Source: Haliotis rubra
Lineage: Eukaryota
Direction: 5' to 3'
Length of the DNA stretch: 64,000 bases
Assembly (NCBI RefSeq): GCF_003918875.1
Contig: NW_025765103.1
Location: 1,984,001-2,048,000 of the forward strand
Shown here: positions 1 through 50,250 of the stretch, one piece after another
Layout: the number at the start of each line of letters is the position of its first letter
Position numbering within the stretch: position 1 is the stretch's first letter
Position numbers and translations under genes: made by a program
Notes under the pieces: generated by a model
Seen by the model: the letters and a program-made list of their open reading frames with translations, nothing else
The model's database searches: none
What the model was told of the DNA's origin: nothing

Positions 1-596
1 TCCCATACCTTAACATAGACTTAAGGTAGTCTTAGCGCTAATGTGACCGTAACTCCCATACCTTAACATAGACTTAAGGTAGTCTTAGCGCTAAGATGAC
101 CGTTACTCCCATACCTTAACATAGACTTAAGGTAGTCTTAGCGCTAATGTGACCGTAACTCCCACACCTTAACATAGACTTAAGGTAGTCTTAGCGCTAA
201 GGTGACCGTAACTCCCATACCTTAACATAGACCTAAGGTAGTCTTAGCGCTAAGGTGACCGTAACTCCCATACCTTAACATAGACCTAAGGTAGTCTTAG
301 CGCTAAGGTGACCGTAACTCCCATACCTTAACACAGACTTAAGGTAGTCTTAGCGCTAAGGTGACCGTAACTCCCATACCATAACATAGACTTAAGGTAG
401 TCTTAGCGCTAATGTGACCGTAACTCCCACACCTTAACATAGACTTAAGGTAGTCTTAGCGCTAAGGTGACCGTAACTCCCACACCTTAACATAGACTTA
501 AGGTAGTCTTAGCGCTAAGGTGACCGTAACTCCCATACCTTAACACAAACCTAAGGTAGTCTTAGCGTTAAGGTTGTTTTGTACAACGGAACCCTG
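1..596. repeat. 53-bp tandem satellite (about 11 units, runs off the window start) ending in a MITE-like terminus
   Basis: Unit TCCCATACCTTAACATAGACTTAAGGTAGTCTTAGCGCTAAGGTGACCGTAAC repeated. The array ends in TTTGTACAACGGAACCCTGG, resembling the terminus of the small MITE at 9077-9167. Confidence 0.95.
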
Positions 597-1194
597 GTAC
601 TAGACAAGGTATTCCTGATACACAAAGAACTTGATGTGAACTTGATTCCTAATATCACTGACATACATGTGACGGTGATTGATTTTCGCTGAGGGTTGGA
701 GACAAGCAATCAAAATGTAACCTCTGTATTGAGAGCGAAAGTAATATTGGAAATAGGGCCAGTCAGCGGGGATATTTATACATAATGCGCCGTTGTTACT
801 AAAATTGTAAGGGGTATTACTTTATTCATACACGCGTCCTTGCTCGGTAGGCAATATAGCGTTCCTGGTCGCGGATAATGTCCACGTACCAGCACGTCCC
901 AGAAATTAGTATACTGTCAGAGCAACACTAGGGGGTTACCATTTGCTAGGTTATGTGTGCGTTTCTTCAGGAAGTGGCAGAATATATCTTGCATCAAACC
1001 CTACCATTCAATCCGAAATGTTACGTTCTATTTTGACGTCCCAATACCGCTATGTCCAGTGTCTGGCAACAAACACTTGATTGTAACCGGTTCTCAATTC
1101 GACATGACAATAGTTCAGCTAATATAGCATACGACTTTATGGACAACAACTTCTTGGTTACTGCATTAAGTCCATTGTTATCCACAAACTGGTA

Positions 1195-1904: not shown

Positions 1905-4900
1905 TTAAAATAGCCTGACTCCCATAAAACTGGTAAAGTACTGACCGATGACAGTGTCAGTTTGAGAGATATGGTCTATAGTTACATACACCCTGGATCC
2001 GACCAATAACTCCAAAATAGCAAATGCCGTTCCCGAACCGGACTTGGACCCTGATGTTGTGGTCGCAGCAACTGTCGCCTCTTCTAGCCTCAGGTTCAGG
2101 TTGAAACTCTTCATGGTGTCTCCTGCGTAATCGTTGACTCCGTTAATCAGAAACAAATACACCCCATTGGTGGGGGCAGTGAAATTTCCAGTTGTGGAGT
2201 TGTAACCTCCGCCGACGTTGTATCTGGTGTCGTTGAACTTCAGTACATCATTTTCGGAGAAGTTTGCTACTTTGTAGTTAGGAAAACTTACATCGAAGTA
2301 GACTTTCGGATCTTGCTCTGCCGAGGAAAGGTGAAAAGGGTAAAGCGTCCTTTGAGGAAATGGCCATGTGAAGGATGACATACAAGTACTTTAATTCACA
2401 ACCCCAAATCATATCTGAATCTATGACTGTACAGATATGTTAACTATCAGGCTGCAAAATAACGCCATTTACACATTCTTGTATTGAATTATTCTACATG
2501 ACAGCTTTGCATACAAAATATAGACGTATGGTCATGTGATAAGGTTCACATACAGAATATAGATGTATAGCCATGTGACAACGTTTACATACAGAAGATA
2601 GACGTATGGTCAAGTGATACTGACTGACTGACTGAGTTTAGTTTTACGCCGCTTTTAGCAATATTCCAGCAATATCACGGCGGGGAACACCAGAAATGGG
2701 CTTAACACATTGTGCCCATGTGGGGATGGTCAAGTGATAAGGTTCACATACAGGGTATAGACGTATGATCATGTGACAACGTTTACATACAGAATATAGA
2801 TGTATAGCCATGTGACAACGTTTACATACAGAAGATAGACGTATGGTCAAGTGATAAGGTTCACATACAGAATATAGACGTATAGCCAAGTGACAACGTT
2901 TACATACAGAATATAGACGTATAGCCATGTGACAACGTTTACATACAGAATATAGAAGTATGGTCATGTGACGTTTACATACAGAATATAGACGTATGGT
3001 CATGTGATAAGGTTCACATACAGAATATAGACGTATGGTCATGTGACAACGTTTACATACAGAATATAGATGTATAGCCATGTGACAACGTTTACATACA
3101 GAATATAGACGTATGGTCATGTGATAAGGTTCACATACAGAATATAGACGTATGGTCATGTGACAACGTTTACATACAGAATATAGACGTATGGTCATGT
3201 GATAAAGTTCACATACAGAATATAGACGTATGGTCATGTGATAAGGTTCACATATACAGTATAGACGTATAGTCATGTGATAAGGTTCACATACAGAATA
3301 TAGACGTATGGTCATGTGATAAGGTTCACATGCATAATATAGACGTATAGCCATGTGACAACGTTTACATACAGAATATAGACGTATGGTCAAGTGATAA
3401 GGTTCACATACAGAATATAGACGTATGGTCATGTGATAAGGTTCACATGCATAATATAGACGTATAGCCATGTGACAACGTTTACATACAGAATATTGAC
3501 GTATGGTCATGTGATAAGGTTCATATACAGAATATAGACTTTGGACTATGTGACAACATTTACATACAGAATATAGACGTATGGTCATGTGATAAGGGTC
3601 ACATACAGAATATAGACGTATGGTCACGTGATAAGGCTCACATGCAGAATATAGACGTATGGTCACGTGATAAGGCTCACATGCAGGATAAAGACGTATG
3701 GTCACGTGATAAGGCTCACACGCAGGATAAAGACGTATGGTCACGTGATAAGGCTCACATGCAGAATATAGACGTATGGTCATGTGATAAGGTTCACATG
3801 CAGAATATAGACGTATGGTCACGTGATAAGGCTCACATGCAGAATATAGACGTATGGTCATGTGATAAGGCTCACATGCAGGTTATAGACGTATGGTCAT
3901 GTGATAAGGTTCACATGCAGAATATAGACGTATGGTCACGTGATAAGGCTCACATGCAGGATAAAGACGTATGGTCATGTGATATGGCTCACATGCAGAA
4001 TATAGACGTATGGTCATGTGATAAGGCTCACATGCAGAATATAGACGTATGGTCATGTGATAAGGCTCACATGCAGGATAAAGACGTATGGTCACGTGAT
4101 AAGGCTCACATGCAGGATAAAGGCGTATGGTCACGTGATAAGGTTCACATGCAGAATATAGACGTATGGTCATGTGATAAGGTTCACATACAGAATATAG
4201 ACGTATGGTCATGTGATAAGGTTCACATACAGAATATAGACGTATGGTCATGTGATAAGGTTCACATACAGAATATAGACGTATGGTCATGTGATAAAGT
4301 TCACATACAGCATATAGACTTTTGACTATGTGCAACGTTTACATACAGCATATAGACGTATGGTCATGTGACAAGGTTCACATACAGCATATAGCAGTCA
4401 TATGACAGTCCTCAGTGAATGCCCAAGTGTACATCTTACCTAAATGCGTTAAGCGAGTCTTGACACTTTCCAAGTTCACAACGGAGCTGACCACAGCTTG
4501 GACTTGTTTGGTGACGCTGGCGAAATCTTTGCTTAACTTCTCAAATGACCTCTCAGACACATTTCTGGCAACCTCATCAGCTGTGGTTGACGTGTTGAGC
4601 AGCCCAACATCCTTGTGCAATATCGTGACTTCATCAGCAAGGCCTTGTAAAGTGTGAAGATGCTCAGCGCTTTCATTAAACAAGGTATCGATGTTAACTG
4701 TCACGTTTTGAAGTTTGCTGTCAAACGAAACACCAAGGAGTTTGTTTTCTTGTTTTCTTTCTTGCACCTGAACTTGAAATGAAGAGTTCAAATGCATTTG
4801 CTGCATTTTCAGCACATACAGTGTCTGCGTCAGTTGTTGGTTTTTTGAGAGACTGGGTGTTCCCTTGTTGTTGTAGATCCATGTTGCATGACGCTAGCAT

Positions 4901-6146: not shown

Positions 6147-7670
6147 AACTCTGTCAAAAAAGAAACGCAACCCCTGTCCTCAGATATGAAAAATTCGTTT
6201 GAATGAAGTTATTGCTTCCAAACTAAATTTTATTCGAATGTATTGAAATGATACACGTAATTAATGAAGATTACCATCCAAACAACTGCATTTGTACGCA
6301 TAAGTGTATTTTATTGCTTATTCCGTCACAACGCATGAAATGACCCTCATGGTGACTTCGCACAAAAAAAACACATGCAAATCATGAAAATGGCAGTTAA
6401 TGTAGGGTGTATAAAAGCCCATGTGCTTCCGTATTATATTCATTCATTTGTCGCCGAAAAGCTGTGTTAAAAATGCCACGATTGAGTGCTGCCGACCGAA
6501 ATATCGCCATTGGTCGTGTTCAAGCCGGAGAAAGTTTTGGAACTGTTGCACGGCACCTAAATGTTCACAAAACAACGATATCCCGACTTTGGAGCCGCTA
6601 CAACAACTTCAATTTGACCAACGATCGCCCGAGAAGTGGAAGGCCAAGAATCACGAGCCCCTTCAAGATCGGTACATCCGGGTCCATCACCTGCGTAATC
6701 GGCATGCCCTACCAACCGTGACTGCCACACAAATACCAGGTTTGAGGAGAGTGTCAGCTCAAACGATTAGGAACCGTCTGAAAGAAGCGGGTTTACGTGC
6801 CTGTAGACCAGTTGTTGGACCTGTACTACGCCCCCTACATCGACGCCGACGACTCAGGTGGTGCAACAACGTAAGGATACGGACTTTACAAAACTGGAGG
6901 CGAATCTGGTTTCTGATGAATCACGTTTTCTTTTGCAACGTCACGACGGAAGACAGCGTCTGTATAGGAGACGTCATAAACGTTTTGCGCCCATCTGCGT
7001 CCGACAGGTGGACAGATTTGGCGGAGAAAGCGTCATGGTTTGGGAACCATCTCATACAACCAGAAATCAGACTTGGTGATCGTTCCAGGAACCTGACAGC
7101 CCAACGTTACATCAACCACGTGTTAGAGCTTCACCTTCTCCCGATTATTGACCAACAGACACAGATTTTTCAACGGGACAACGCCCGGCCTCATACTGCA
7201 CGTGCAACAATGAACTTTCTGCAGAATTCCAACGTCAATGTCTTGCCATGACCCTCTAAATCACCAGACCTCAACCCTATTGAACACCTGTGGGATACTC
7301 TGGATCGACGCGTACGTCAACGTCAGCCGCCGCCACAGACGCTGCAACAGCTCGCCGTTGCACTGCAGGAGGAGTGGAGAGCCATTCCCAGGAAAGAATC
7401 CGGCGTCTTATCCGTTCTTGTCCAAGGAGATGCCGTGCAGTGATTGCAGCGCGTGGTGCTCATACGAGATACTGAGAAAGACGCCCCCCTGGTGACAAAC
7501 TGGTGTCTGTGAGATGACTTTTGAAATGACAATTTTAAACATGCCCATCTGGGTTATTATTCTGCCAAATTTCAGACTTCTGTCTTAAATAATAAAAATG
7601 CCGTGTCGTCCTAAAACTTCAGATCAAAATCTCTAAAATACAGGGGTTGCGTTTCTTTTTTGACAGAGTT
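6147..7670 (+). mobile_element. Full-length Tc1 (DD34E) transposon
   Basis: Perfect 31-bp TIRs AACTCTGTCAAAAAAGAAACGCAACCCCTGT, with TA duplication at 6145-6146 and 7671-7672. Confidence 0.97.
6473..7475 (+). pseudogene. Tc1 transposase (HTH + DD34E), disrupted
   Basis: MPRLSAADRNIAIG...RSGRPR; WFSDESRF; FQRDNARPH; SPDLNPIEHLW, with 34 residues between the second D and E; ends GAHTRY*. Several frameshifts and a TGA replacing the conserved W at 7249-7251. Confidence 0.92.
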
Positions 7671-7789
7671 TAGAATTCATGGTTTCGACCGACTTGATGA
7701 GCCTCTGGTCTTTAGAGTCCTGTGTAACATCCTTGCTTACCTTCCTGATCCCTCCATCGAAGATGGTAGTCGCATCCCAAGGTTTGCGG

Positions 7790-8845
7790 TTGGGAACTGT
7801 GAGAAAATCAATGTGTCACAGTTCCCATCAGGTGCGAAAATCAACTTGTCACAGTTCCCATCAGGTGAGAAAATCAACTTGTCACAGTTCCCATCAGGTG
7901 AGAAAATCAATGTGTCACAGTTCCCATCAGGTGAGAAAATCAACTTGTCACAGTTCCCATCAGGTGAGAAAATCAATGTGTCACAGTTCCCATCAGGTGA
8001 GAAATCAATGTGTCACAGTTCACATCAGGTGAGAAAATCAACTTGTCACAGTTCCCATCAGGTGAGAAAATCAATGTGTCACAGTTCCCATCAGGTGAGA
8101 AAATCAATGTGTCACAGTTCCCATCGGGTGAGAAAATCAACTTGTCACAGTTCCCATCAGGTGAGAAAATCAATGTGTCACAGTTCCCATCAGGTGAGAA
8201 AATCAATGTGCCACAGTTCCCATCAGGTGAGAAAATCAACTTGTCACAGTTCCCATCAGGTGAGAAAATCAACTTGTCACAGTTCCCATCAGGTGAGAAA
8301 ATCAATGTGTCACAGTTCCCATCAGGTGAGAAAATCAACTTGTCACAGTTCCCATCAGGTGAGAAAATCAATGTGTCACAGTTCCCATCAGGTGAGAAAT
8401 CAATATGTCACAGTTCCCATCAGGTGAGAAGATCAATGTGTCACAGTTCCCATCAGGTGAGAAAATCAATGTGTCACAGTTCCCATCAGGTGAGAAAATC
8501 AATATGTCACAGTTCCCATCAGGTGAGAAAACCAACTTGTCACAGTTCCCATCAGGTGAGAAAATCAATGTGTCACAGTTCCCATCAGGTGAGAAAATCA
8601 ATGTGCCACAGTTCCCATCAGGTGAGAAAATCAACTTGTCACAGTTCCCATCAGGTGAGAGAATCAATGTGTCACAGTTCCCATCAGGTGAGAGAATCAA
8701 TGTGTCACAGTTCCCATCAGGTGAGAAAATCAATGTGCCACAGTTCCCATCAGGTGAGAAAATCAACTTGTCACAGTTCCCATCAGGTGAGAGAATCAAT
8801 GTGTCACAGTTCCCATCAGGTGAGAGAATCAATGTGTCACAGTTT
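7790..8845. repeat. 33-bp minisatellite (about 31 units)
   Basis: Unit GTCACAGTTCCCATCAGGTGAGAAAATCAA(TGT/CTT); highly homogeneous. Confidence 0.97.
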
Positions 8846-8854
8846 CAATCAAAA

Positions 8855-9005
8855 GTGAGTGAGTGAGTATGGTTTTACGCCGCTTTTTGGCAATATCACG
8901 GTGGGGGACACCAGAAATGGGCTGCACACATTGTACCCATGTCTTGAATGGAACCCCGGTTATCGGCGTGATGAGCGAACGCTTTAACAACTAGGCTACT
9001 CCACT
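8855..9005 (-). mobile_element. tRNA-SINE copy
   Basis: GTGA tail, MESC-like core and decayed tRNA head; same family as 52375 and 53944. Confidence 0.85.
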
Positions 9006-10172: not shown

Positions 10173-13100
10173 ATGGAAGAGCAGCTGGCAGCCTATCGAG
10201 CGAAGAAGGCGAAAGAAAAGGAGGCGTCCAAAGGATCATTGTCTTCGGCAGTTTACAGCTTTACTTCAGGAATTCTCAGCTCACGGAAAAGGGTAACAAA
10301 CGTAATAATGATGTATGTAGCTTCAAAGCTCAGCCACATCGGCACTGGGGTGACGGCTTCCGTCATCTTTAAAGTTTAAAGATGACGTGTATAAAATATT
10401 TACGTGTTGTTCAATAATAGAATAGGATCAACCACCTGTTTCCCTGTAAACGCCCTTGACCGCTACGCATCTCTTGTTTTTAACCACCTGTGGTTAAATT
10501 GGGAATTATTAATAGAACAATGGTTGTTTTGACAAAAATATACTGAATGGAACCACAACAGAATATGTTCGTCCACAATCCAACCCTTAACCCCACCCTG
10601 GCAAACATTCTCTAGTTGCACCAACTCAGGTTATGCTACTGTTAAGAGCAGGAAGAGGTCACGAGAATGATGATATATTCTTGTCAGATGTTTGATTGAC
10701 ATTGCTTGAACATAGGCAAGTAAAAGTCTATATCCGTCTACGACTTAGAATTTTAGTTACATGGTCCATATATCGTCACCCGTAGCCACAGGATATGTTT
10801 TGAACAAACGTTTCATGACTACTGATGATGCTCATTCAGTTCCAAAATCAGTCAAGCGTGATTAATTCTACAGGTATCCTAGATCTAGATTACAAGTCAA
10901 TTGATGTGTTTATAGTCCAATTAAGTCAACATGTTTATCTTCCAGTAGTTATATAGTGGGGGTTCTATTACAGGGTACCCTATTGGTTTATTTTGGTTTA
11001 ATTCCGCTCCCAGCACCCAGTAACAAATGATCCCCCAAGCATGAGACATCGTTCGATGTTCCCCCTACTGTTGACTACAACGGTGTCCATACGCGTAAGT
11101 CGTGACGCCATCGATGGCGATCCATTGTTTGTGTTCATGGGCGACACCGACGTCTTGTTGAGGGTGATGCCATATATCCTATGCTTGTTACTTCTCAATG
11201 CATTCATTTGATGTTTGAACGTTTGATTCTTGAAGAGAGCTTGTTTGAAGAGGGTGTGTTTGATGTGTTGTTTCACGACATATTTCTTGATCCCTTTGGC
11301 TTTTTTTTATTTCGTCGTCGGCTTTTTTAATGGAATACATCTTAGGTCTTAACCCGATGTATCCCGCACTGGGTGTCCCAGCACATTCATCCTTCATCTT
11401 GCTGAGGACCTTTTTATTCGTTTGGTTGTGTAGGGCGTGGTCTGGGGGTAATCACTTGTATGGTACAGGTGGATGTGTTTTGCCATGTCCTCGTACATGT
11501 CCTTGGTACGAATTTCTAACAACAAGGAATCCGTGTCGGTATACACCACACCACATCAATCGCCGTATTGTGTCTTAAATTTATTATAATAAAAGCCATA
11601 CATCAAGTGTTTGGATAAATCGAGAATGCTCATCCCTGCGTAGACAGGCCGGTTGAGCTTGATATGGCTTTTAGTCATGTGTAGAGCTGCCAAATCATTG
11701 TTGAACATTTTACTTCGGTTAAAGGCTCGACTCGCTATGAGTTTCCTTAGTTTTTCCTCCTGGTGTGATCTGACTAATTTCACGTTGACATGCTTACTTA
11801 AATTCTTCATGTTTTTTCCAAATACTGAGTTGTTCATCAGTTTGTAGAGGTTTTTCTCAAAGTCGCTCGTGGCTTGTTTTCTCAGATCCGTATTCAACCG
11901 AATGTAAGGTTCCATCCAGGGACTTTGATGAAACATCAGAACCCGATGTATTTTGGTGAGCTTCATTCCCAGTGATAAGTACAGTTGCAGATTCCGATAG
12001 TGCACGACTTATTTTTTCTTGTTCATCAAGTTAGGTACGACTTTTTCCATGTTAGCCAGTTTGTTATCTCCCAACAAGTTTCGTTGATATTTGGACAACC
12101 ATTCGCGATCGACCATTAATCGTTCGGGGCCAGCGGATAACTGTTGTGGGAGGCATGCAATTCTTTGGGATAGTCCAAGTCCACTTTGAATATGTATCCT
12201 CTCTCAAAGTTTTCGGGGATAGCCATAATGTTCTTCATTTTAAAATGCTTGCGATCAACCCACTCGAACCAGCCCGTGGGCAAAAGTTGACTCATGGCCG
12301 AACCATAGAGATTATTCGCATCCAGATAGAGGAGATGGTTGGAGGGTTGATTTGGATTATAGTTTTTCCTATATTTATGATTGGCTTTTGTGTAGCGTTT
12401 CGATACCATAGAAATCCCGCTGCGCATTCCTTTCTCGATAAACAGGTGCATGTCGTAATCCGTTAACTATTCCAATTTGACTCTTGTTTTCTTCAAGAGA
12501 GCATCCCATGACAGACCGGGGCTTGTGTAGTACCAAGCGGGGTTGAGTTGATATTATTTCAAACACATCTTTCTAAAAATTTCGAAGATGTCGGCAAGTA
12601 GTAGCACAATCTTCCTCACCAGCAAAGACCGAGTCGCTGCATCAGTGGATCGATTGGTTATAGCGAAGGTATCGTTGGCTTTCACCAAACTGTCGAGGGA
12701 TGACAGGAGAAACTGGGCATTGTGGATAAATCTCAGGCTGTTTAACGAGAAGGAAATGTATTCTTTCCATGTTATTGGGGATGCACTTGATGTCGCCATC
12801 GACCTTCGAGATGGCCTTCATGATGAGGTGGGCATCGTAACGTCTGAGGTTGTGAAACACCACGGGGATTTGTATGGTTTTGGGATTGATTCTAAGTTCA
12901 AGTTACAGCTTTGTGGGCGGCGCCTCTGTATTGACCGGTGATGTGACAATGATCTCTCACGGAATTGGCTTTAAGGGGGCCATGACATACGTGACAATAT
13001 CTAGTTCGTTGATGAGCTCGCTCATCCTCTGGTGTCATATCCATGGGGCCGGGGTCCACCAAAGCTTTCCTGATTTTTTTCTCTTCGTTTTGTAAGTACG

Positions 13101-15559
13101 TGAGAAACGTTTCGGCAGCGTCATGGCCTCGGTAGATCATGGGCTCTTTTGTTTATCCGTCGCATCGGACGACCACGTACCCGAACCCGCAAGCTTCATG
13201 TTCCTGCGTTTTGTACGTGAAACTTTGTTTGGTCGTGTTGGGCAGGTCGTGGTCGACCTGTCTGATAAGGGCTTCGAAGTCAGTGTAGATAACGTAGGGT
13301 ACAGGCATTTGATGTTTGTGGTTGATAAATTTTAAGATGTTTTTCTCTTCTTCAGGCATGTCGATCGTAACAGCAGTCTCTCCCACACTCTAGTTGTTTG
13401 GCGCGACTGTACCCGTGCAGACATCTCTCGCAAAAATACTTCTTCGCTTTGTGAGAGGATTGGTCGTACAACAGCCTGCTCTAACTTTTAATCGCTGCGT
13501 AGTGAAATTGATCCTCTTTTCCGATCAGAAATAAATTGATTCTGCGCACGGTTTTATCCTGGACAGGGCTTATCCTGTGCACAATAACCCTATACCCCTT
13601 GTGTCCAAACACGTTGAAGAGTAAATTGTTTTGCTTTTTGAATCTCGTCCAGTAGGAGATGGATGTGAGGCGCTCTACACTGGTGAAATCGAGCCCAGAT
13701 TCCTCCAGCGTGGGGTAGCTGTAACGCCTGCTTGGATTACCTTGGGGTTTAAATAAGGCAACTATGGGAGCCACCACCGCGCAATAATTATTAAAATCAT
13801 TCCCTTTGGTTTCAGGGTTAACAATGGCCTTTTTTCCCCTGAAATGCTTTGGTACCGGGAAGTAACATCCGCCTTTGAACGGCATGTAGTTCGCTATATC
13901 CACATAGATGGTATCGATACAACCAACCACCCATCGGCTAGTGCGGAGCAAACCGCGACAATGTTGGTCGACATCTTGTCTAGGCTGGACAACGACAACG
14001 AAGAAGAACTCTGGGAGGAAAGCGTTGAGGAGGAGCAAGAAGAGACGCATCTGGATGTCCAGAAGGTGCGACAGATGCTAGAATCGGTCCAAAAGTGGAC
14101 CTACCTTTCGCTAGCCGACGTGTTTCTCTGGAAGGTTGTGCACATGACCTGGAAGCACAGCACACCGACTGATATACCGGTCGACAGACAGGCTGACGAG
14201 AAGACAGAAACGCCCAAACCAGTTTCCATGGCCAAACCCTGGGACCCCTTCCAAATGTACTAGGATAGAAGAAAAAAAATATCGAGAGAGCTGCGATAAT
14301 TTTTCTTGGAATTGGAAATATAGAACTATATAATTTGCGGGTAGTATTCTGTTCTGCATTCCCTGCGGGACTATTTGTTATTAGTTGCCATCTTCCCACC
14401 CCATTGGCAGCAGATACAATACTTGTCGAAACTCCTAGTGCCTTGCAGATTTTGAGGCTCCTATAAACATTAAAAATATTTTGGGGGGGGAATTCACCCC
14501 CAATAAACCTTGCAACACAAACTGTCCAAGAAACCTCACTCGGTCAGTGCTCATATATGAGCACTGGCGTGACCTACAACATGGGGCTATCTAGGCCAGT
14601 AGAACGCTCATATATGAGTGCTGGCCTGACCTACAACATGGGGCTATCTAGGCCAGTAGAACGCTCATATATGAGCGCTGGCGTGACCTACAACATAGGG
14701 CTATTTAGGCCAGTAGAACGCTCATATATGAGCTCTGACGTGACCTACAACATGGGGCTATCTAGGCCAGTAGAATGCCCATATATGAGCGATGGCGTGA
14801 CCTACAACATGGGGCTATCTAGGCCAGTAGAACGCTCATATATGAGCGCTGGCGTGACCTACAAACCTCACTCTGCTCACTTGCAAAAGTTTCTTCCGCT
14901 ATCCCTACTCGAACGCGAGACGCTGGAATCAAAGGCCAGCACTCTACCATTACGCTGGCGGGACGATTGGTGTTAACACGGCGAATTCAACATGCCTAAG
15001 CTGGCGAGCTAGTCTATTTTTAGCATATGGACACCGTTGTAGTCAATAGTAGGGGGAACAGTTTTTACTGGGTGCTGGGAACGGAATTAAACCAAAATAA
15101 ACCAATAGGGTACCTTGTAATAGAACCCCCACTATATAACTACTCTTCCAATTCACAACAAATGTTACCCATTGTTATTTCGTCCTGCAGGAAAACAGTC
15201 CTCAAAGTGTACATCAGCAACAATCAGCAACAGCTGCCCACACAGGAGGTTCTGTCACCATATCTACTGAAGGAGACATCATCACGGAAGAGAAACCATT
15301 CTTCTCCACAGAGACGATACTGAAGATTATCCTGTGGTTCTTGCTGTGGGGAGTGTTTGTGGAACTGGGGTTTGGAGCTGTATATTTCATTGTGTCTTTG
15401 TCCATCATACTATATAGGAACACAAGGACAGGTCCTAGACGGGATGGCCGCCTCAGTGCATACTCTGTGTTCAATCCAAACTGTGAGAGATTGGACGGGA
15501 CATTCACTGCTGAACAGTTCGAGAAGGAACTGAGACATGGCGCAGGTTCAGTTCATTGA
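10173..15559 (+). CDS. SAYSD1: SAYSvFN domain-containing protein 1 (2 coding exons)
   Basis: Exon 1 10173-10292 (MEEQLAAYRAKKAKE, GTAAC donor). Exon 2 15191-15559 (CTGCAG acceptor, in frame), with a hydrophobic hairpin LWFLLWGVFVELGFGAVYF and the signature SAYSVFNPNCERLDGTFTAEQFEKEL. Confidence 0.95.
11065..13945 (-). pseudogene. Protein-primed family B DNA polymerase (Polinton-type), fragmented
   Basis: Motifs in order across frameshifted ORFs: YVIYTDFEAL (exo I); CHVC...RDHCHITGQYRGAAH (endonuclease VII-like Zn finger); FHNLRRYDAH (exo II); YLDANNLYG (pol A); KLMNNSVFGK (pol B); YTDTDS at about 11530-11545 (pol C); KDE and GLRPKMY; C-terminal TTYAYGH. An internal deletion lies between LLVRK and VLLLADIFE. 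Confidence 0.93.
13961..14263 (+). CDS. Small acidic orphan ORF inside the Polinton-like element
   Basis: Open 100-aa frame MLVDILSRLDNDNEEELWEE...KPWDPFQMY*, divergent from pPolB. Its true start may have been lost at the deletion junction near 13945. Confidence 0.45.
   Translation: MLVDILSRLDNDNEEELWEESVEEEQEETHLDVQKVRQMLESVQKWTYLSLADVFLWKVVHMTWKHSTPTDIPVDRQADEKTETPKPVSMAKPWDPFQMY
14548..14863. repeat. 60-bp tandem repeat (about 5 units) subterminal in the Polinton-like element
   Basis: Unit GCTCATATATGAGCGCTGGCGTGACCTACAACATGGGGCTATCTAGGCCAGTAGAAC.., containing the palindrome GCTCATATATGAGC. Confidence 0.95.
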
Positions 15560-18905: not shown

Positions 18906-21900
18906 CTATGGGGATGTCATGGCTGCCTTGGCCTCCTGTGAGAGCTCCTGCAGTTTGTCATATCCTTCCACTGAGGCTGGAGAAACACCAAAGGATTCAA
19001 CCTGGAACATAAGCATGTTAACATACAGAACATTGCTTTGGACAAATTGCTCAAGTAAAGGGAGATAATCATCCTGCTAATGCCATCAATACTTCACGTC
19101 ACCCTAAAACTTTAAAACCAACTAAGACTTTTGAGCTGTACCAAAGAAACAAAAACCATCATTAGTTGAGCTGTAGGCACAGGACTGGAAGTAAACAAAA
19201 CAGTTTCAACACTATTTTAGCTCACACAGATAGATCTGCTTCATGTTGTTATTGCCTACATATTCCCAGGACTGGAGCCCTGTTCCCTCAAATATCCCTT
19301 CCCCAAAGTTGCCCTGTTCTACCTTCTTACAGGTTGCCACCTTCCTGTTCCCTCAAACATCCCTATGGTAACTGACATGTTCCCCTAAGTAGCTCTGATT
19401 GCTACCTTCCTGTTCCCTCAGATATCCCCATGGTTACTGACCTGTTCCCCAAAGTTGGCAATGTCAATGATAAGCTGCTGCCTGATCTTGTCATCGTCTG
19501 AGATCCCCTGCCCCCTCAGTCTTGTCTGTTCCCCGAGCCTTCTTCAGGCGCTTCAGACTGTCTTCCATCTTCTTGACCGATGACAACACTTCTGAGGTGA
19601 CGCCAAAATATCTGGAAATTTGATGTAGAATATTAACATGTTTATATTCTTATGCAGTGCAGATAAACATCTTGTGTTGAATTGTTTATCAGTGAGTAAT
19701 GAATCATTTAGAATGCCACATTTTAAGAACCCCTGTTGTTGACTTCATATTATTTCTCTAATTCTTGTAACCCCACTCAGTGGCTGGAAGCTTGATCAAT
19801 AATCTAAGCATTCTGATGATCACTCAGTCACCACAGATCAGCTCTTGTGACGGAAAAGAGGCATCCCCACCTGGAGACATCCATGGGATACCAGAACACT
19901 GGGACCTATTCTCAGATGGCATTTCAACCTGGAGAATATACAGGTGGCCCTGACTCTGACCCACAAGCCATACTGCATCCAGAAGATTCAGGTAGTGGTC
20001 TTAAGGCATGTACACAGAGGTAGACAACAACTCACTGTTCTGCTAGACTGCTGAAGACTGTCTTGAGGAAGCCTGTTCGCTGTTTCCCTCCCAAGGTCTC
20101 TACATGCTCATCCAAAAACAGTTTCAGTGGTTTGCCCAGACTGATGATGTACGTTGATGGTTTGCTGGGTACCTGAAAGCAGATAAGGCGACACACTTCA
20201 ATTTATCATTAATCAGTCTGTTTCAGGCTTGAGCTAATCTTTATCCCTGTATTCAAGTGAGCATACCACAAGATGAGATTCAATGAAATATCCATATTTT
20301 TCCAACATTAACAAATCATTTCTTTATTTCTGTTTAATAAACAATTTTTCAAACTTCTGGCTCATAGTTACCATTATTTATAAAACATGAAGTTTTCCTA
20401 CTGACACTAATTTTATAAGTCTAGTCTGGACTGTCTTGCCCTCGACAAAAGTAGCGCTGGATATCACCATGAAGCAATCAAGGGGACACAGCTGCTGAGG
20501 TGATATTTTGACTCACATCTCTGTTGGTCCTTCTGTACAACCGAGGGATGTCGCTGACTTGCTTGAGGTAGACACAGCACTGACCAATCAAGTCTCCTGA
20601 CACGAACACCTGGAACTGGGGCAGCCTCTCCAACACAGACAACCCACATTCAACAAAAGTGTCTGAAGCAAACATAAAATATCCGTTACTGAAGTTCTAA
20701 AAGTTAGTACTGCAGAGAAGGAAAATGAGAACGTGTTTGGAATCAGATCCTTATTTATTAATTTTCACAAGCTGAATTCAAATACCTGTTCTGACTGTTA
20801 ATGTTCATGACATTAACAATATAGTTGTGTCCAGTACGTAAACACAATGTATTTACTTGTCATGGTTCACTAAATATGAACCTTGTTATGCAGTTGCGAT
20901 TTAATACAATTCAACAACGCATCAATTTCAATCAGCCAGTAAACCTCTGTGACCATTTAATAACAATAACGCATAAAATGTTTGGTACAAATACAGCACC
21001 ATACTTTCAAACTACTGGGCACCAGACAATTATCTGACTTGTCCATGATTCGACACTCATGATCAAAACGTACTAGAGTTTACCAACAGACAACACAATG
21101 CAAACATATAACATTTTGCCAATCAAGGTATCCTTCGGTTACTCCAGGTTCTTCCCCAAATTGCTCAGCAATGATTCCACAAATACTGATGAATCGTTAC
21201 TCAAACTTATCTCTATCGTGTTTGTGTCATTATCATAAATTTGTTTGATAGAAAGTTGTCGTATCTTAACATCACTTAGTTCATCATGTGACAGTAAATT
21301 GTAACTTATTGTAACTCTTGGAATCAGGATTTGATCTAAATATATGTAATAAGCAGGGACAAAATGGGTTAAAATATGTGATGACACTGACACTTGGAAT
21401 GTGAGTTTCGAATAGTTCAACATTAGATAATAAAAACAAGAGTCATCAGAAGATGACATATCCCCCCGGCCCCCACACATTTGAAAGAACAAATCAACGA
21501 AGCCCACCCTCCCATTTGAGACTAAGTCCAAAACGTTTCCATATAAACTGGAAAAAATAGAAATGCCCAAAATCTGCAAATAGCAAATGCCACCACTTTG
21601 GGATCTGCCTCATATATCTGCCAAGTTTTGCTGAAAGATATTAAGAAGTTTTCAAGTTGTGCTCCGGAAATGAAACCCAACCCTCCCTTTTCAGACTAAG
21701 TCCAAATCAATTCCATGGAAACCGAGGAAAATCACAAAAATCTGTAAATAGAAAAAGGCACCACATTAGGTTCTGTTTGATATATATACCAAGTTTTGCA
21801 GAAATATATTGAACCAGTTTTGAGTTGTGCTCCAAAACCGAAGCCCACCCCTCCCTTTAAGACTAAGTCCAAAACGTTTCCATGGAAGCCGAGAAAAATA

Positions 21901-34562: not shown

Positions 34563-37500
34563 ATGCCTTGTTGGTATTTCGAGAAGAAAGATATCCGCAA
34601 CTCAGCATCTGCACAGCATGGCTTGGATGCCAACACTGAGGCGCGGTACCGACGGGAGGGAGCTCGTCTTATACTGGATGCTGGTACCAAGCTAGGACTG
34701 TATCCTTGACTTCATAGTACTGTGTATACTCAGTAAGCTACATCCTTTGAAATGGATGCTAGGCCGTAAGGTAGAGACATCTGAATTTGTAGTATTTGGT
34801 AAAAAAGTTAATACAACTATCAATTTTACTTACCCATCATGCCAGGAGGATTTGGTATGGTATATCACTGCTTGTGAGGAGCAGCTTGCTAATATTTGTC
34901 ATGTCAATGTGCCGTTGACTATTATTTTACAAGTTGTCAAGTACAATAATAATAGAAGTTGTTATTTCTAGTGTTATGTGTTCAGAATTATTCTTTTATC
35001 TTAACTAATGTTAAACTACTGATGGATCATCACAGACTGATCTATCATTTTCTGTTAATCCTGTAAATGCCATTAGAAACAGAATCGACTTTCCCATGTT
35101 AAACCTATGTCTGGCAGAGTTGATCCACCTTTATGCAGGAGAACAATATTGATAGTAACATAATATTGTGGATGAATTCTGAACTGTGTGCATGGTGTGA
35201 ACTGTGACGTGTATTTACCGAGAATGTTATCCCTTAATGATCCTCAGTCGCTATGATACATGTTCAACAGGAGTGGTGTACTTTCACAGATTTTACATGT
35301 TCCACTCATTCAAGGAATTCAACAGATATGTAAGTATTCAAGTCATATTGCACAGATGATTAATATTTCTAGACTTTTCAGAATTCTTGTTGCAAACCAT
35401 TATGTCTGTCTCTATGTTAAGTATCCATTGCACCTCATACCACAAATAAATCAACATTTGTTCAAACACTGTCTGAGACCGTAGATGTCTTAGGTTGTAG
35501 CTGTTTGTGTGTTAAGGTGACAGCTGCGTGCTGCCTATTCCTGGCGGGGAAGGTGGAAGAGACGCCCAAGAAGTGTAAAGACATCATCCGCACCTGTCAC
35601 GGCCTCCTTAGCCCCCAGGCCTTTGCTGCCTTTGGAGATAATCCTAGAGTGAGTTGTCGTGTGCCAATCGGGAGTCTTTTCTAGGAAATAGAAACTACAT
35701 CCCGGTAGGAAAAATGATGAAGGGATGGCAAGCTTTTTTAACAGTCTTCACAAATGTTACTGGTCAGGGCTTAAATTCTGTGAAACTCATGAAATAATTG
35801 GACAATATATCCTCAAGACATGGCTCAATTGTAAGATATTTGGATATAAAAGTAGTTTCATAACATGATTTACACCAAGTACGAAATATTCATAGTATAT
35901 GCTTGATTACTAATGTTATCTGTTCCATGTTCTTATATGTTCACAATACAGCAAACAAACATGAATTAGTGAGGCTGTGTATGTTATGGGCCGTGTAATG
36001 CTCTCAGCATGTGTCTCATGCTCTTCCTGTGCATGTAATGCACTCCTTGTGTGTAATGCTCTCCCCGTGTGTGTAATGCTCTCCCCATGTGTGTAATGCT
36101 CTCCCCGTGTGTGCAATGCTCTCCCCGTGTGTGCAATGCTCTCCCCATGTGTGTGTAATGCTCTCCCCGATGTGTGTAATGCTCTCCCGTGTGTGTGTAA
36201 TGCTCTCCCGTGCAATGCTCTCGTGTGTAATGTCCCATGTGTGTAATGCTCTCCCCATGTGTGTGCTCTCTCCTGTGTGTAATGCTCTCCCCCGTGTGTG
36301 CAATGCTCTCCCCATGTGTGTGCAATGCTCTCCCGTGTGTGCAATGCTCTCCCCTGCAATGCTCTCCTGTGTGTGTGTGCAATGCTCTCCCGTGTGTGCA
36401 ATGCTCTCCCGTGTGTGCAATGCTCTCCCCGTGTGTGCAATGCTCTCCCCGTGTGTGTCTCCCCATGTGCTCTCCTCCCAGTGTGTGATGCTCCCCATGT
36501 GTGTGTGCTCTCCCCCCATGTGTGTGTGTGTGCAATGCTATGCTCTCCTGTGTGTGCAATGCTCTCCCCGTGTGTGCAATGCTCTCCCCCGTGTGCAATG
36601 CTCTCCCATGTGTGTAATGCTCTCCCCGTGTGTGCAATAATGCTCTCCCCCGTGTGTGTGTGTATGCTCTCCTCATGTGTGTGTAATGCTCTCCCATGTG
36701 TGTAATGCTCTCCCGTCCCCGTGTAATGCTCTCCTCGTGTCTGTGTTTTATGTCCTCCCGTGTGCAATGCTCTCCCCCTGTGTAATGCTCTCCCCATGTG
36801 TGTTATGTTCTTGTGTGTGTAATGCTCTTCCCGTGTGTAATATTGTTCTCCCTGTGTGTAATGTTCTTCCCATGCGTGTAATGCTCTCTCCTTGAGTATA
36901 ATGCCATCACAGTGTGTGGAATGCTCTTCAATTGTGACTGTCTGCAGGAGGAGGTGATGACACAAGAAAGGATTCTGCTGCAGACCATCAAGTTCGATCT
37001 ACAAGTGGAGCACCCTCACAGCTCCCTGCTGAAGTTTGCCAAGATTCTCAAAGGTACGCTCAGCATCTCATCTCATGTAATCTGATTTCATGTAAGATTT
37101 CCAGTGTCTCATAATTTGTATTCAGTACATCAGTACTGATATCTGTATGCGGTACCTTGATCTCTGTGTACTGTGTGTTGATCTCTGTACAATGTGTTGA
37201 TCTCTGTGTGTGTGATCTCTGTGTAATGTGTGTGATCTCATCTCTGTACTGTGTGTTGATCTCTGTGTACTGTGTGTTGATCTCTGTGTACAATGTGTGT
37301 GATCTCTGTGTACTGTGTGGTGATCTCTGTACAATGTGATCTCTGTGTCTGTGTGTTGATCTGTGTGTTGATCTCTGTGTACTGTGTGTTGATCTCTGTG
37401 TACTGTGTGGTGATCTCTGTGTACTGTGTATGGTGATCTCTGTGTACTGTGTGTGGTGATCTCTGTGTACTGTGTGTGGTGATCTCTGTGTACTGTGTTG

Positions 37501-40500
37501 TTCTCTCTGTACTGTGTGTTGATCTGTGTACAATGTATTGATCTCTGTGTACAATGTGTTGATCTCTGTGTACAATGTGGTGATCTCTGTGTGCTGTGTG
37601 TTGATCTCTGTACTGTGTGTTGATCTCTGTACTGTGTGTTGATCTCTGTGTACTGTGTGATCTCTGGTACTGATCTCTGTGTGTGTGTGATCTCTGTGTG
37701 TTGATGATCTCTGTGTGCTGTGTGTTGATCTCTGTGTACTGTGTGGTGATCTCTGTGTGTGATCTCTGTGTACTGTGTGGTGATCTCTGGGTACTGTGTG
37801 TTGATCTCTGTGTGTGTTGATCTCTGGGTGTGTGGTGATCTCTGTGTACTGTGTGTTGATCTCTGTGTACTGTGTGGTGATCTCTGTGTGTGTCTCTGTG
37901 TACTGTGTGTTGATCTCTGTGTACTGTGTGGTGATCTCTGTGTGCTGTGTGGTGATCTCTGTGTACTGTGTGGTGATCTCTGTGTGCTGTGTGTGTGATC
38001 TCTCTGTGTGTTGATCTCTGTGTACTGTGTGTTGATCTCTGTGTACTGTGTGTTGATCTCTGTGTACTGTGTGGTGATCTCTGTGTACTGTGTGGTTGAT
38101 CTGTGTGTGTGTGTTGATCTCTGTGTACTGTGTGTGTGTGATCTCTGTGTGTACTGTGTGTTGATCTCTGGGTACTGTGTGGTGATCTCTGTGTACTGTG
38201 TGTTGATCTCTGTGTACTGTGTGGTGTCTCTGTCTCTGTGTACTGTGTGATCTCTGGGTACTGTGTGTGTTGATCTCTGTGTACTCTGTGTGTGTGTTGA
38301 TCTCTGTGTACTGTGTGGTGATCTCTGGGTACTGTGTGTTGATCTCTGTGTACTGTGTGTGTTGATCTCTGTGTACTGTGTGTTGATCTCTGGGTACTGT
38401 GTGTTGATCTCTGGGTACTGTGTGTTGATCTCTGTGTACTGTGTGTTTATCTCTGTGTACTGTGTGTTGATCTCTGGGTACTGTGTGTGTGATCTCTGTG
38501 TACTGTGTGGTGATCTCTGGGTCTGTGTGTTGATCTCTGGGTGCTGTGTGTGTGTTGATCTCTGTGTGATCTCTGTGTGGTGATCTCTGGGTACTGTGTG
38601 TTGATCTCTGTGTACTGTGTGTTGATCTCTGTGTACTGTGTGTTGATCTCTGTGTACTGTGTGTTGATCTCTGTGGTACTGTGTGTTGATCTCTGGGTAC
38701 TGTGTGTTGATCTCTGGGTACTGTGTGTGATCTCTCTGTGTGTTGACTGTGTGTGTGATCTCTGGGTACTGTTGATCTCTGGGTACTGTGTGTTGATCTC
38801 TGTGCTGTGTGTGTGATCTCTGGGTACTGTGTGTTGATCTCTGTGTACTGTGTGTTGATCTCTGGGTACTGTGTGTTGATCTCTGTGTACTGTGTGTTGA
38901 TCTCTGTGTACTGTGTGTTGATCTCTGGGTACTGTGTGTTGTTAATCTCTGTGGTCTCTGTACTGTGTGTTGATCTCTGTGTACTGTGTGTTGATCTCTG
39001 GGTACTGTGTGTTGATCTCTGTGCACTGTGTGTTGATCTCTGTGTACTGTGTGTGTCTGATCTCTGTGTGTGGTGATCTCTGTGTGCTGTGTGTGATCTC
39101 TGGGTACTGTGTGTTGATCTCTGTGTACTGTTGGTGATCTCTGTGCTGTGTGTTGATCTCTGGGTGCTGTGTGTTGATCTCTGTGTACCGTGTGTGTTGA
39201 TCTCTGTGTGTACTGTGTGTTGATCTCTGGGTACTGTGTGGTGGTGATCTCTGGGTACTGTGTGTGTGATCTCTGTACAATGTGTTGATCTGTGTGTTGT
39301 TGATCTCTGTGTACTGTGTTGATCTCTGTGTACTGTGTGGTGATCTCTGTGTACCGTGGTGATCTCTGTGTACTGTGTGTGATCTCTGTGTGTGTTGATC
39401 TGTGTGTGATCTCTGTGTGTGTGTGTTGATCTCTGTGTACCGTGTGTGTGTGATCTCTGTGATGTGTGGTGATCTCTGTACTGTGTGGTGATCTCTGTGT
39501 ACTGTGTGTGATCTCTGTGTACTGTGTGTTGATCTCTGGTGTGTGTGTGATCTCTGGGTGCTGTGTGTGTGATCTCTGTGTACTGTGGTGGTGATCTCTG
39601 GGTACTGTGTGGTGATCTCTGTGTACTGTGTGGTGATCTCTGTGTACTGTGTGGTGATCTCTGGGTACTGTGTGGTGATCTCTGATACTGTGTGTTAATC
39701 TCTGTGTGTGTGTGTGTGATCTCTGTGTGGGTGATCTCTGTGTGTGTGTGTGGTGATCTCTGGGTACTCTGTGTGTTGATCTCTGTGTACTGTGTGTTGA
39801 TCTCTGTGGTACTGTGTGTTGATCTCTGTGTACTGTATGGTGTGTGTGTGTATCTCTGTACTGTGTGTTGATCTCTGTGTACTGTGTGTGGTGATCTCTG
39901 GGTACTGTGTGTGGTGATCTCTGTGTACTCTGTGTGTGTGATCTCTGTGTACTGTGTGTGTGTTGATCTCTGATACTCTGTGTTGATCTCTGTGTATGTG
40001 TGGTGATCTCTGGGTACTGTGTGTGTTGATCTCTCTGTACTGTACTGTGTGGTGATCTCTGGTGTGTGTTGATCTGTGTGTGTGTGATTGATCTCTGTAC
40101 TGTGTGTGATCTCTCTGTACTGTGTGTGATCTCTCTGTACTGTGTGGTGACTCTGTGTACTGTGGTGATATCTCTGTGTGTGTGATATCTGGGTACTGTG
40201 TGTGTTGATCTCTGGGTACTGTGTGTGTGTGATCTCTGTGTACTGTGTGTTGATATCTGTATACTGTGTACTGTGTGTTGACATCTGTGTACTGCATGTG
40301 TTGATCTCTCTGTACAGTTTGTGTTGATCTCTGTACTGTGTGTGTTGATCTCTGTGTACTGCATGTGTTGATCTCTCTGTACTGTGTGGTGATCTCTGTG
40401 TACTGTGTGTGTGATCTCTGTGTACTGTGTGGTGATCTCTGTGTACTGTGTGTGTTAATCTCTGTGTACTGTGTACTGTGTGTTGTGGTGATCTCTCTCT

Positions 40501-46981: not shown

Positions 46982-47455
46982 GAGTTGCCATTCCCCATAT
47001 CATCTAACTAGTGGTTGCCATTCCCCATATCATCTAACTAGTGGTTGTCATGACCGGAACATCGAACTATGGTTGCCATGACCAGATCATCTAACTATGA
47101 GTTGCCATGACATCATCTAACTATGGGTTGCCATGACCGGATCATCTAACTATGGGTTGCCATGACCGGATCATCTAACTATGGGTTGCCATGACCGGAT
47201 CATCGAACTATGGGTTGCCATGACCAGATCATCTAACTATGGGCTGCCATGACCAGACCACCTAACTATGGGTTGCCATGACCGGATCATCTAACTATGG
47301 GTTGCCATGACCGGATCATCTAACTATGGGTTGCAGTGACCCGATCATCTAACTATGGGTTGCCATGACCAGATCATCTAACTATGGGTTGCCATGACCG
47401 GATCATCTATCTCTGGAGTTGCCATGACCGGATCATCGAACTATGGTTTTCATGA
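46982..47455. repeat. 29-bp minisatellite
   Basis: GGGTTGCCATGACCGGATCATCTAACTAT units. Confidence 0.95.
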
Positions 47456-50003: not shown

Positions 50004-50250
50004 GAGTGAGTGAGTGAGTTCAGTTTTACGCCGCACTCAGCAATATTCCAGCTATATGGCGGCGGTCTGTAAATAATCAAGTCTGGACCAGACAATCCAG
50101 TGATCAACAACATGAGCATCGATCCATGCAATTGGTATACGATGACATGTGTCAACCAAGTCAGCGAGCCTGAACACCCGATCCCATTAGTTGCCTCTTA
50201 CGACAAGCATGGGTTACTGAAGGTACATTCTAACCCGGACCTTCACGGGG
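50004..50250 (-). mobile_element. Nin-domain/MESC-type SINE-like repeat
   Basis: Minus strand carries CTTGTCGTAAGAGGCAACTAA, the GCTGGAATATTGCTGAGTGCGGCG core and a TCAC tail. Confidence 0.85.

What the first reader, a model, noticed from the sequence alone, without database searches (positions are those of the whole stretch)
10944..15144. Polymerase-only mini-Polinton, precisely integrated with a 5-bp TSD inside the SAYSD1 intron
Seen: a 4,201-bp element with AGTAGT...ACTACT ends, near-identical TIRs and exact CTTCC TSD. Its coding content is essentially only a protein-primed PolB plus one small ORF; no retroviral-like integrase, ATPase, protease or capsid is recognisable. Established: autonomous Polintons/Mavericks are about 15-20 kb virus-like elements with those genes and 5-6-bp TSDs. 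Inference: either a one-off post-insertion deletion or a member of a defective, satellite-like family that retains origins plus polymerase and is mobilised in trans. Clean ends and TSD around a heavily decayed polymerase favour mobilisation after decay. This is the best candidate for an undescribed system in the window.
Basis: partly seen in the sequence, partly recalled or inferred. Interest (0 to 1): 0.8.

Follow-up and report, generated by a model that had tools for sequence, protein, structure and literature searches.

The report
Dead polymerase-only Polinton remnant in abalone
A 4.2-kb leftover of a virus-like Polinton/Maverick transposon, keeping only its two ends and a wrecked DNA-polymerase gene, sits in the intron of an abalone SAYSD1-like gene; it is a real, precisely integrated insertion, but one dead copy cannot show that it belongs to a new satellite family.

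Summary
Window 10944-15144 is a 4,201-bp element with AGTAGT...ACTACT ends. Its inverted terminal repeats are 151 and 122 nt, about 95% alike, with one 29-nt indel. It is flanked by CTTCC on both sides. The host is an abalone (Haliotis sp.), not a vertebrate. The element lies in the single intron of a SAYSD1-like gene, 46 nt upstream of the splice acceptor. Haliotis asinina has an empty orthologous site with one CTTCC, so both the insertion and the duplication are real.

The only recognisable coding content is a protein-primed family B polymerase pseudogene with an endonuclease VII/HNH-like insert. It shows 9-12 stops, at least 4-5 frameshifts and 64-83 codons missing internally. No integrase, ATPase, protease or capsid remnant was found. 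Its relatives sit in canonical Polintons that carry rve integrase and a packaging ATPase. A spider relative lies in a 9.2-kb derivative with AGCAGT...ACTGCT ends.

The element is therefore a defective, non-autonomous Polinton derivative. It has more stops than the repeat-arm divergence predicts (P about 0.005-0.11). This mildly favours insertion of an already short, already decayed form with helper enzymes supplied in trans. No other copy could be reached, because the host genome is not searchable with these tools. The satellite-family idea is untested.

The parts
10173..10292 (+). Host SAYSD1-like gene, coding exon 1
   Evidence: tblastn with H. asinina SAYSD1-like protein P0177: residues 1-40, 100% identical
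10939..10943 (.). Left copy of the target-site duplication (CTTCC)
   Evidence: single copy at the empty site in H. asinina, L004 3775-3779
10944..11094 (.). Left terminal inverted repeat, 151 nt, begins AGTAGT
11070..14000 (-). [quoted passage not shown] It has 9-12 in-frame stops, at least 4-5 frameshifts and 64-83 codons missing internally. The variable N-terminal 60-280 residues of relatives are not detectable.
   Evidence: Local tblastn with 13-53 full-length relatives gives outer bounds of about 11070-13999, minus strand only. The palm piece matches Pfam DNA_pol_B_2 at E 1.1e-5. phmmer found 9669 relatives, the best 70-83% identical.
11592..11978 (-). Stretch matching Pfam DNA_pol_B_2 (palm/thumb, profile positions 328-461 of 468)
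   Evidence: 25.0 bits against a curated cut-off of 25.8
12919..13014 (-). Endonuclease VII / HNH-like zinc-finger insert within the polymerase
   Evidence: Pfam Endonuclease_7 at E 0.004 in the window piece. The same domain is found in all 8 full-length relatives scanned, reaching E 2.6e-7.
14001..14548 (.). Region upstream of the polymerase with no recognisable coding similarity. It probably holds the decayed N-terminus and 5' leader.
14549..14864 (.). Subterminal tandem array, 57-bp unit x 5.5, 92% matches
14865..15022 (.). Unique subterminal sequence between the array and the right repeat
   Evidence: It looked tRNA-like by eye, but ARAGORN and Rfam do not support that.
15023..15144 (.). 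Right terminal inverted repeat, 122 nt, ends ACTACT
15145..15149 (.). Right copy of the target-site duplication (CTTCC)
15191..15559 (+). Host SAYSD1-like gene, last coding exon (SAYSvFN domain). The acceptor AG is at 15189-15190, 46 nt from the element's end.
   Evidence: Pfam SAYSvFN at E 3.4e-29; 92% identical to H. asinina; sequence read

Best explanation
This is a dead, non-autonomous derivative of a Polinton/Maverick element. It keeps both termini and the polymerase gene, and has lost the integrase and all morphogenesis genes. The termini are inverted repeats with AG...CT ends. By inference they are the sites an rve-type integrase acts on and the origins for protein-primed replication. 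Shown: it was inserted into the intron of the abalone SAYSD1-like gene after this lineage split from H. asinina, with a 5-bp (possibly 6-bp) target-site duplication. Inferred: the joining was done by a Polinton integrase that the element does not encode. I lean, with moderate confidence, to the view that the short form already existed and its polymerase was already damaged when it integrated. In that case both integrase and polymerase came in trans from a full-length relative in the same genome. It is inert now. Confidence is about 0.9 that it is a defective Polinton derivative and about 0.55 for the whole statement including trans supply.
For: Repeats, ends and duplication. Empty site in H. 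asinina, where the two flanks overlap on one CTTCC. Polymerase remnant with an Endonuclease_7-like insert. No other Polinton gene remnant in the element or the window. Relatives of the polymerase lie beside rve integrase and Pox_A32 ATPase on Mb-scale eukaryotic contigs: L006; L008/L009, 71% identical in the palm piece. A spider relative lies in a 9.2-kb element with repeats of about 930 bp, AGCAGT...ACTGCT ends and GTTCTG/GTTCTC flanks, holding an intact polymerase plus only a fragment of the ATPase. The published ranges for Polinton repeats (100-1500 bp) and duplications (5-8 bp) are met (PMC10748475), and the same paper describes HNH inserts in Polinton polymerases. For trans supply: repeat-arm divergence predicts 3-5 stops from decay since insertion, while 9-12 are seen, predictive P 0.005-0.11. 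The polymerase homology runs right up to the left repeat, leaving no room for the genes that follow the polymerase in full-length relatives.
Against: No second copy was found, so nothing shows that a 4.2-kb form ever moved. The stop excess is only borderline. It could also arise from gene conversion between the repeat arms, from CpG decay in a methylated intron, or from stop counts inflated by tblastn extensions. No helper element is present in the window. The AG...CT terminus rule for Polintons is recalled from Kapitonov and Jurka 2006, which the paper library does not hold.
Confidence: 0.55

Rival explanations
1. One-off in-situ deletion. A full-length Polinton of 13-25 kb inserted here, and a single later deletion removed everything between the end of the polymerase gene and the inner part of the far repeat. 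All decay happened in place.
For: No other copy was found. The closest relatives are full-length Polintons in which the integrase lies directly after the polymerase. The left repeat may be only the truncated stump of a longer repeat, since the spider relative has repeats of about 930 bp. The stop excess is not decisive, with P up to 0.11.
Against: The deletion would have had to spare the whole polymerase homology and both termini by chance. The polymerase carries 2-3 times more stops than the repeat arms' divergence predicts. A second, independent lineage (spider) also shows a short derivative that keeps the polymerase.
Confidence: 0.33
2. Capture. A polymerase pseudogene fragment lies between the repeats of an unrelated cut-and-paste transposon that makes 5-bp duplications.
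For: 5-bp duplications are not unique to Polintons. No integrase is present to tie the repeats to a Polinton.
Against: The polymerase remnant fills the element from one repeat almost to the other, in the arrangement of a Polinton end. The termini resemble those of the spider element that carries a related polymerase, AGTAGT against AGCAGT. No transposase remnant of any family was found.
Confidence: 0.05
3. Autonomous single-gene element. The polymerase with its HNH-like nuclease and N-terminal DNA-binding domain would do both target cutting and self-synthesis, with no integrase needed.
For: All relatives carry the Endonuclease_7-like insert, and many carry C2H2 or SAP-like N-termini. Solitary polymerase genes occur in a snail and a spider. 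Many of the closest full-length relatives sit on contigs of only 4-7 kb.
Against: The nearest relatives with known context lie in canonical Polintons with rve integrase. The spider element still holds an ATPase fragment. HNH inserts are a known feature of polymerases in ordinary Polintons (PMC10748475). Short contigs can equally be transcripts or assembly breaks.
Confidence: 0.03

Closest known systems
Polintons / Mavericks (Orthopolintovirales), self-synthesizing virus-like transposons of eukaryotes
   Same: The polymerase is a protein-primed PolB of the same clade as those in integrase-bearing elements. The inverted repeats are longer than 100 bp and the duplication is 5-6 bp, both inside the published ranges. 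The ends are AG...CT.
   Different: It is 4.2 kb rather than 13-25 kb. It has no integrase, ATPase, protease or capsid genes. By the published definition ('all Polintons encode a pDNAP and an RVE integrase', PMC5499653) it is not itself a Polinton, only a derivative.
Internally deleted non-autonomous DNA transposons and defective-interfering genomes of linear DNA viruses
   Same: Both ends are kept, the interior is lost, and the element depends on a helper's enzymes.
   Different: Such derivatives usually lose the replication or transposition gene. This one keeps the polymerase gene in full extent and loses everything else. An insect preprint reports the opposite case: mobile Polinton-related variants that lack polB (10.1101/2025.02.07.637071).
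9.2-kb element of the spider Parasteatoda tepidariorum around XP_021001758 (L002 6237-15414)
   Same: It has a related polymerase, AGCAGT...ACTGCT ends and a 5-6-bp duplication. It lies in an intron of a host gene. It has lost nearly all other genes.
   Different: The spider polymerase ORF is intact at 1293 aa. Its repeats are about 930 bp. A fragment of the packaging ATPase remains.
Linear mitochondrial and cytoplasmic plasmids, and bidnavirus segments (a few kb, inverted terminal repeats, protein-primed PolB)
   Same: Small replicons bounded by inverted repeats whose main gene is a protein-primed PolB. This comparison rests on general knowledge and on the abstract of PMC4061559.
   Different: Those are free replicons that do not integrate with target-site duplications. 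None was fetched or compared here.

Membership tests
Polinton/Maverick | [quoted passage not shown] | tested here: met
   Present as a pseudogene. Pfam DNA_pol_B_2 at E 1.1e-5, just under the curated cut-off. 348 relatives below E 1e-30. Relatives cover about 11070-14000.
Polinton/Maverick | Encodes a retrovirus-like (rve) integrase | tested here: not met
   No rve match among the element's ORF pieces in Pfam. tblastn with integrases of relatives found no hit in the element. The one window hit lies in a minisatellite at E 0.006.
Polinton/Maverick | Morphogenesis module: packaging ATPase, adenovirus-like protease, major and minor capsid proteins | tested here: not met
   No Pfam match. No tblastn hit in the element with any neighbour gene product of L001, L002, L006 or L008.
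Polinton/Maverick | Terminal inverted repeats of 100-1500 bp | tested here: met
   151 and 122 nt, about 95% identical. Published range from PMC10748475.
Polinton/Maverick | Target-site duplication of 5-8 bp (classically 6 bp) | tested here: met
   CTTCC on both sides and a single copy at the empty site in H. asinina. A 6-bp reading is not excluded.
Polinton/Maverick | Size 13-25 kb | tested here: not met
   4,201 bp.
Polinton/Maverick | Polymerase groups with polymerases of integrase-bearing elements | tested here: met
   Relatives 55-71% identical in the palm piece lie beside rve and Pox_A32 genes. No formal tree was built.
Non-autonomous (trans-mobilised) transposon family | Several copies with the same internal structure and different flanks or duplications | not testable with these tools
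   No eukaryotic genome DNA search is on hand. Indirect routes found nothing: window, exact-protein look-ups, word searches, metagenome and viral contig scans.
Non-autonomous (trans-mobilised) transposon family | A full-length helper with matching termini in the same genome | not testable with these tools
   None is present in the 64-kb window, and the rest of the genome is out of reach.

The most novel reading that the evidence does not exclude
Short Polinton derivatives that keep the polymerase may be a recurrent, semi-autonomous satellite class. They would keep the origins and their own polymerase and borrow integrase and capsid from full-length elements. The abalone copy would be a decayed member and the spider 9.2-kb element, with its intact polymerase, a younger one. 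The many full-length relatives on 4-7-kb contigs would then be further members.
Probability: 0.2. Interest if true: 0.6.

Novelty: new member of a known kind. Interest (0 to 1): 0.35.

Why it matters
As it stands, this is a clean textbook case of a Polinton-type integration in a mollusc: both ends, the duplication and an empty site in a sister species are all visible. That is useful for annotating abalone genomes and for dating Polinton activity in gastropods. It would matter more if copies that keep only the polymerase proved to be a family. Polintons would then have satellites that retain replication but outsource integration and packaging. That is the reverse of the usual defective element, and it bears on how small polymerase-bearing replicons such as linear plasmids and bidnavirus segments arose from Polinton-like ancestors.

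Tried and rejected
1. Vertebrate host. Rejected: the SAYSvFN exon is 92% identical to Haliotis asinina.
2. tRNA-derived SINE at about 14890-14965, suspected by eye. Rejected: ARAGORN found no tRNA and Rfam gave only a chance miRNA match at E 0.25 inside the tandem array. The stretch is unique in the window.
3. The 'small ORF' and other plus-strand ORFs. No family matched them.
4. The N-terminal polymerase piece in the word-index protein search gave no hit in its length band. Palm and motif-A pieces against solved structures gave nothing.
5. Exact-protein look-ups of two window ORF pieces. Not on record.
6. The terminal-repeat 22-mer in metagenome and viral contig collections gave 0 hits.
7. 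The closest fragment, P0297 (83% identity), lies on a 2.6-kb scaffold that ends 37 bp after the ORF. It is only 73% identical in DNA over 709 nt, so it is not a copy of this family.
8. DNA comparison of the element with L001, L002, L003, L006 and L008 showed similarity only in polymerase coding sequence and none in the repeats.
9. Inverted repeats around the solitary polymerase genes in L001 and L003. None found within the stretches read.
10. Kapitonov and Jurka 2006 is not held in the paper library.
11. Literature searches for polymerase-only or non-autonomous Polintons found no such description.
Full report
OBSERVATION. The element spans window 10944-15144 (4,201 bp). It begins AGTAGT and ends ACTACT. 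Its ends are inverted repeats. A 93-nt block and a 38-nt block are each 95% complementary and are separated by one 29-nt indel, giving 151 nt on the left (10944-11094) and 122 nt on the right (15023-15144). The terminal 28-mer occurs exactly twice in the 64-kb window, against 0 expected from shuffles. CTTCC lies directly outside both ends. The window contains no N.

HOST AND SITE. The ORF at 15194-15559 matches the SAYSvFN domain at E 3.4e-29. Searched on its own by reference, this exon is 92% identical to the SAYSD1-like protein of Haliotis asinina and 87% identical to that of H. cracherodii. The window is therefore abalone DNA, not vertebrate DNA. tblastn with the H. asinina protein places exon 1 at 10173-10292 (residues 1-40, 100% identical) and the last exon from about 15190. 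The element fills most of the single intron. It ends 46 nt upstream of the acceptor AG and lies antisense to the host gene.

EMPTY SITE. The orthologous genes span 1.2 kb in H. asinina and 1.9 kb in H. cracherodii, so neither holds a 4.2-kb insert. I compared the two window flanks separately with the H. asinina locus. The left flank aligns up to window 10943 and the right flank from window 15144. The two alignments overlap on L004 3774-3779, where H. asinina has a single (T)CTTCC. This confirms a precise integration with a 5-bp duplication. A 6-bp reading remains possible if the last T of the element is counted as target. It also dates the insertion to after the split from H. asinina.

CODING CONTENT. 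Among ORF pieces on both strands, Pfam recognised only two. One piece matches DNA_pol_B_2 (E 1.1e-5, 25.0 bits against a cut-off of 25.8). Another matches Endonuclease_7 (E 0.004). A full HMMER scan of 1.84 billion representatives with the palm piece returned 9,669 relatives, 348 of them below E 1e-30. These are polymerases of 1,074-1,335 aa from a sponge, a spider, snails, a beetle and a sea slug, plus many unnamed eukaryotic contigs.

Local tblastn with the full-length relatives maps homology only to the minus strand, with outer bounds of about 11070-14000, and nowhere else in the window. Against 13 relatives the remnant shows 4-5 frame changes, 9-12 in-frame stops, 64-83 codons missing internally and 35-41% identity. 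The variable N-terminal 60-280 residues of the relatives (C2H2 fingers or a SAP-like domain) are not detectable upstream. The gene is dead, but about 93% of its homologous span is still present.

The remaining 1.1 kb between the polymerase and the right repeat holds a 57-bp x 5.5 tandem array (14549-14864) and sequence without any match. Proteins encoded next to the polymerase in four related loci find nothing in the element. These include integrases, packaging ATPases and unnamed ORFs that probably include the capsid proteins and the protease.

WHAT KIND OF POLYMERASE. All eight full-length relatives scanned carry the Endonuclease_7/HNH-like insert. HNH inserts in Polinton polymerases are already published (PMC10748475).

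Context of the relatives, all on chromosomal-scale contigs:
- L006, on a 1.8-Mb contig, has the polymerase followed by rve integrase and Pox_A32 ATPase genes and a row of small ORFs.
- L008/L009 hold the closest relative with known context, 71% identical in the palm piece. They show a decayed polymerase followed directly by rve, a PLA2-like gene and Pox_A32.
- In the spider Parasteatoda, an intact 1,293-aa polymerase lies in a 9.2-kb element (L002 6237-15414). It has repeats of about 930 bp, AGCAGT...ACTGCT ends and GTTCTG/GTTCTC flanks, and sits inside an intron of a host gene. Its only other recognisable content is a 203-aa fragment of the packaging ATPase.
- In Biomphalaria and in L001 the polymerase gene stands alone, with no repeats found in the stretch read.

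The clade is therefore Polinton-type, and short derivatives that keep the polymerase occur in at least two phyla.

These look-ups returned host-chromosome loci that hold integrated Polinton-like elements. I read their gene tables and repeats and ran similarity comparisons only. I built, joined, repaired and saved nothing beyond plain translations of the called genes for tblastn. No fetched contig looked human.

ONE-OFF OR FAMILY. No tool here searches a eukaryotic genome by DNA. Every indirect route came back empty:
- There is no second copy in the window.
- Exact-protein look-ups of two window pieces found nothing on record.
- No protein fragment above 83% identity exists among 5.8 billion clusters. 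The 83% fragment is a different family at the DNA level.
- The repeat's 22-mer has no hit in the metagenome or viral contig collections.

Two indirect arguments remain. First, the repeat arms differ at about 7 of 131 aligned sites. If they were identical at insertion, and all decay came afterwards, 3-5 stops would be expected in 2.9 kb. This uses a nonsense fraction of 0.03-0.06 measured on three intact relatives' genes. The observed 9-12 stops have a predictive probability of 0.005-0.11. That suggests a polymerase already damaged at insertion. Repeat homogenisation or CpG decay could mimic it. Second, polymerase homology runs right up to the left repeat, so the loss removed everything after the polymerase and nothing of it. 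The spider element shows the same preference. A random in-situ deletion would not be expected to do this twice. I therefore lean at about 0.55-0.6 to insertion of an already short form, at about 0.33 to a one-off in-situ deletion, and give little weight to capture or to an autonomous single-gene element.

MECHANISM. Shown: the termini, the duplication, the empty site, the polymerase remnant, the absence of other genes and the Polinton context of relatives. Inferred from what is established for Polintons and rve integrases: an integrase made a staggered 5-bp cut in the target and joined the element's ends, and gap filling produced the duplication. The repeats would also have served as origins for protein-primed synthesis. 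Because the element has no integrase and its polymerase is broken, both functions must have come from a full-length relative. The alternative is that they came from the element itself before an in-situ deletion.

COMPARISON WITH KNOWN THINGS. By the published definition, a Polinton has a protein-primed polymerase plus an rve integrase (PMC5499653). This element fails the integrase criterion and is a derivative, not a member. My literature searches found no description of polymerase-only non-autonomous Polintons. An insect pangenome preprint reports mobile Polinton-related variants that lack polB, which is the opposite arrangement. The rule of AG...CT termini is recalled from Kapitonov and Jurka 2006, which the library does not hold.

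LEFT OUT, AND SELF-CHECK. Many of the closest full-length relatives sit on contigs of only 4.1-7.4 kb. That could mean short polymerase-only elements. It could equally mean transcripts, assembly breaks, or free genomes of small animal viruses. I could not tell which beforehand, and fetching an animal virus is barred by any road, so I did not look them up. That step is referred. I noticed this afterwards, deleted nothing, and give no such coordinates in this report.

VERDICT. This is a real, precisely integrated, polymerase-only and now dead Polinton derivative in an abalone. The claim of an undescribed satellite system rests on one copy and remains untested.

Noticed in passing
relatives P0072, P0169, P0037, P0026, P0116, P0045, P0171, P0070, P0040: Many of the closest full-length polymerases (1,100-1,242 aa) lie on ENA or Logan contigs of only 4.1-7.4 kb, barely longer than the gene. 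They could be short polymerase-only elements, transcripts, assembly breaks or small free replicons.
   Followed up: no
L002 6237-15414 (Parasteatoda tepidariorum CM092288.1): A 9.2-kb element with inverted repeats of about 930 bp, AGCAGT...ACTGCT ends, an intact 1,293-aa polymerase ORF and only a fragment of a packaging ATPase, inside an intron of a LolA-like host gene. It is a second short derivative that keeps the polymerase.
   Followed up: partly
L003 10001-14242 (Biomphalaria glabrata LOC106055486): A solitary polymerase gene with C2H2 fingers and an Endonuclease_7 domain. It has an intron and three annotated isoforms, and no inverted repeats or Polinton genes within about 6-10 kb. It may be a domesticated or stranded copy.
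   Followed up: no
L001 8147-9873: Next to a 1,259-aa polymerase on a 1.6-Mb contig lie small genes with Bro-N, VRR-NUC plus C2H2, and HNH_3 domains. This is an unusual nuclease-rich neighbourhood without a called integrase.
   Followed up: no
L008 11947-12522: A Phospholip_A2_4 (parvovirus-type PLA2) gene sits between the integrase and other genes of a decayed Polinton.
   Followed up: no
window 6421-7248 (+): A 276-aa ORF with a Tc1/Tc3-type transposase helix-turn-helix domain (E 4e-11), a Tc1/mariner remnant upstream of the SAYSD1-like gene.
   Followed up: no
window 1908-2381 (-): An ORF with a C1q domain (E 2e-13), probably an exon of a C1q-domain gene.
   Followed up: no
window 55731-55918 and 59102-59348: A pair of inverted repeats (73-88 nt blocks, 86-88% complementary) 3.2-3.4 kb apart, with no long ORF between them. 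It may be another non-autonomous element bounded by inverted repeats.
   Followed up: partly
window 43625-43689, 52439-52503, 53981-54045, 8904-8968: A 65-nt sequence recurs in both orientations at 85-97% identity. It is probably a short interspersed or MITE-like repeat.
   Followed up: no
window 1-689, 2464-4300, 7733-8987, 36009-36745, 37151-40558, 47056-47490, 50125-51354, 61085-61934: The window is unusually rich in minisatellite arrays, with units of 53, 39, 33, 19-20, 21, 29, 50 and 35 bp. The 21-bp array creates a spurious 1,212-aa ORF.
   Followed up: no
window 21083-21283 (+): A weak tblastn match (E 0.014, 30% identity over 63 residues) to the Pox_A32-type ATPase of L006. It is either chance or a very old fragment of another Polinton.
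   Followed up: no
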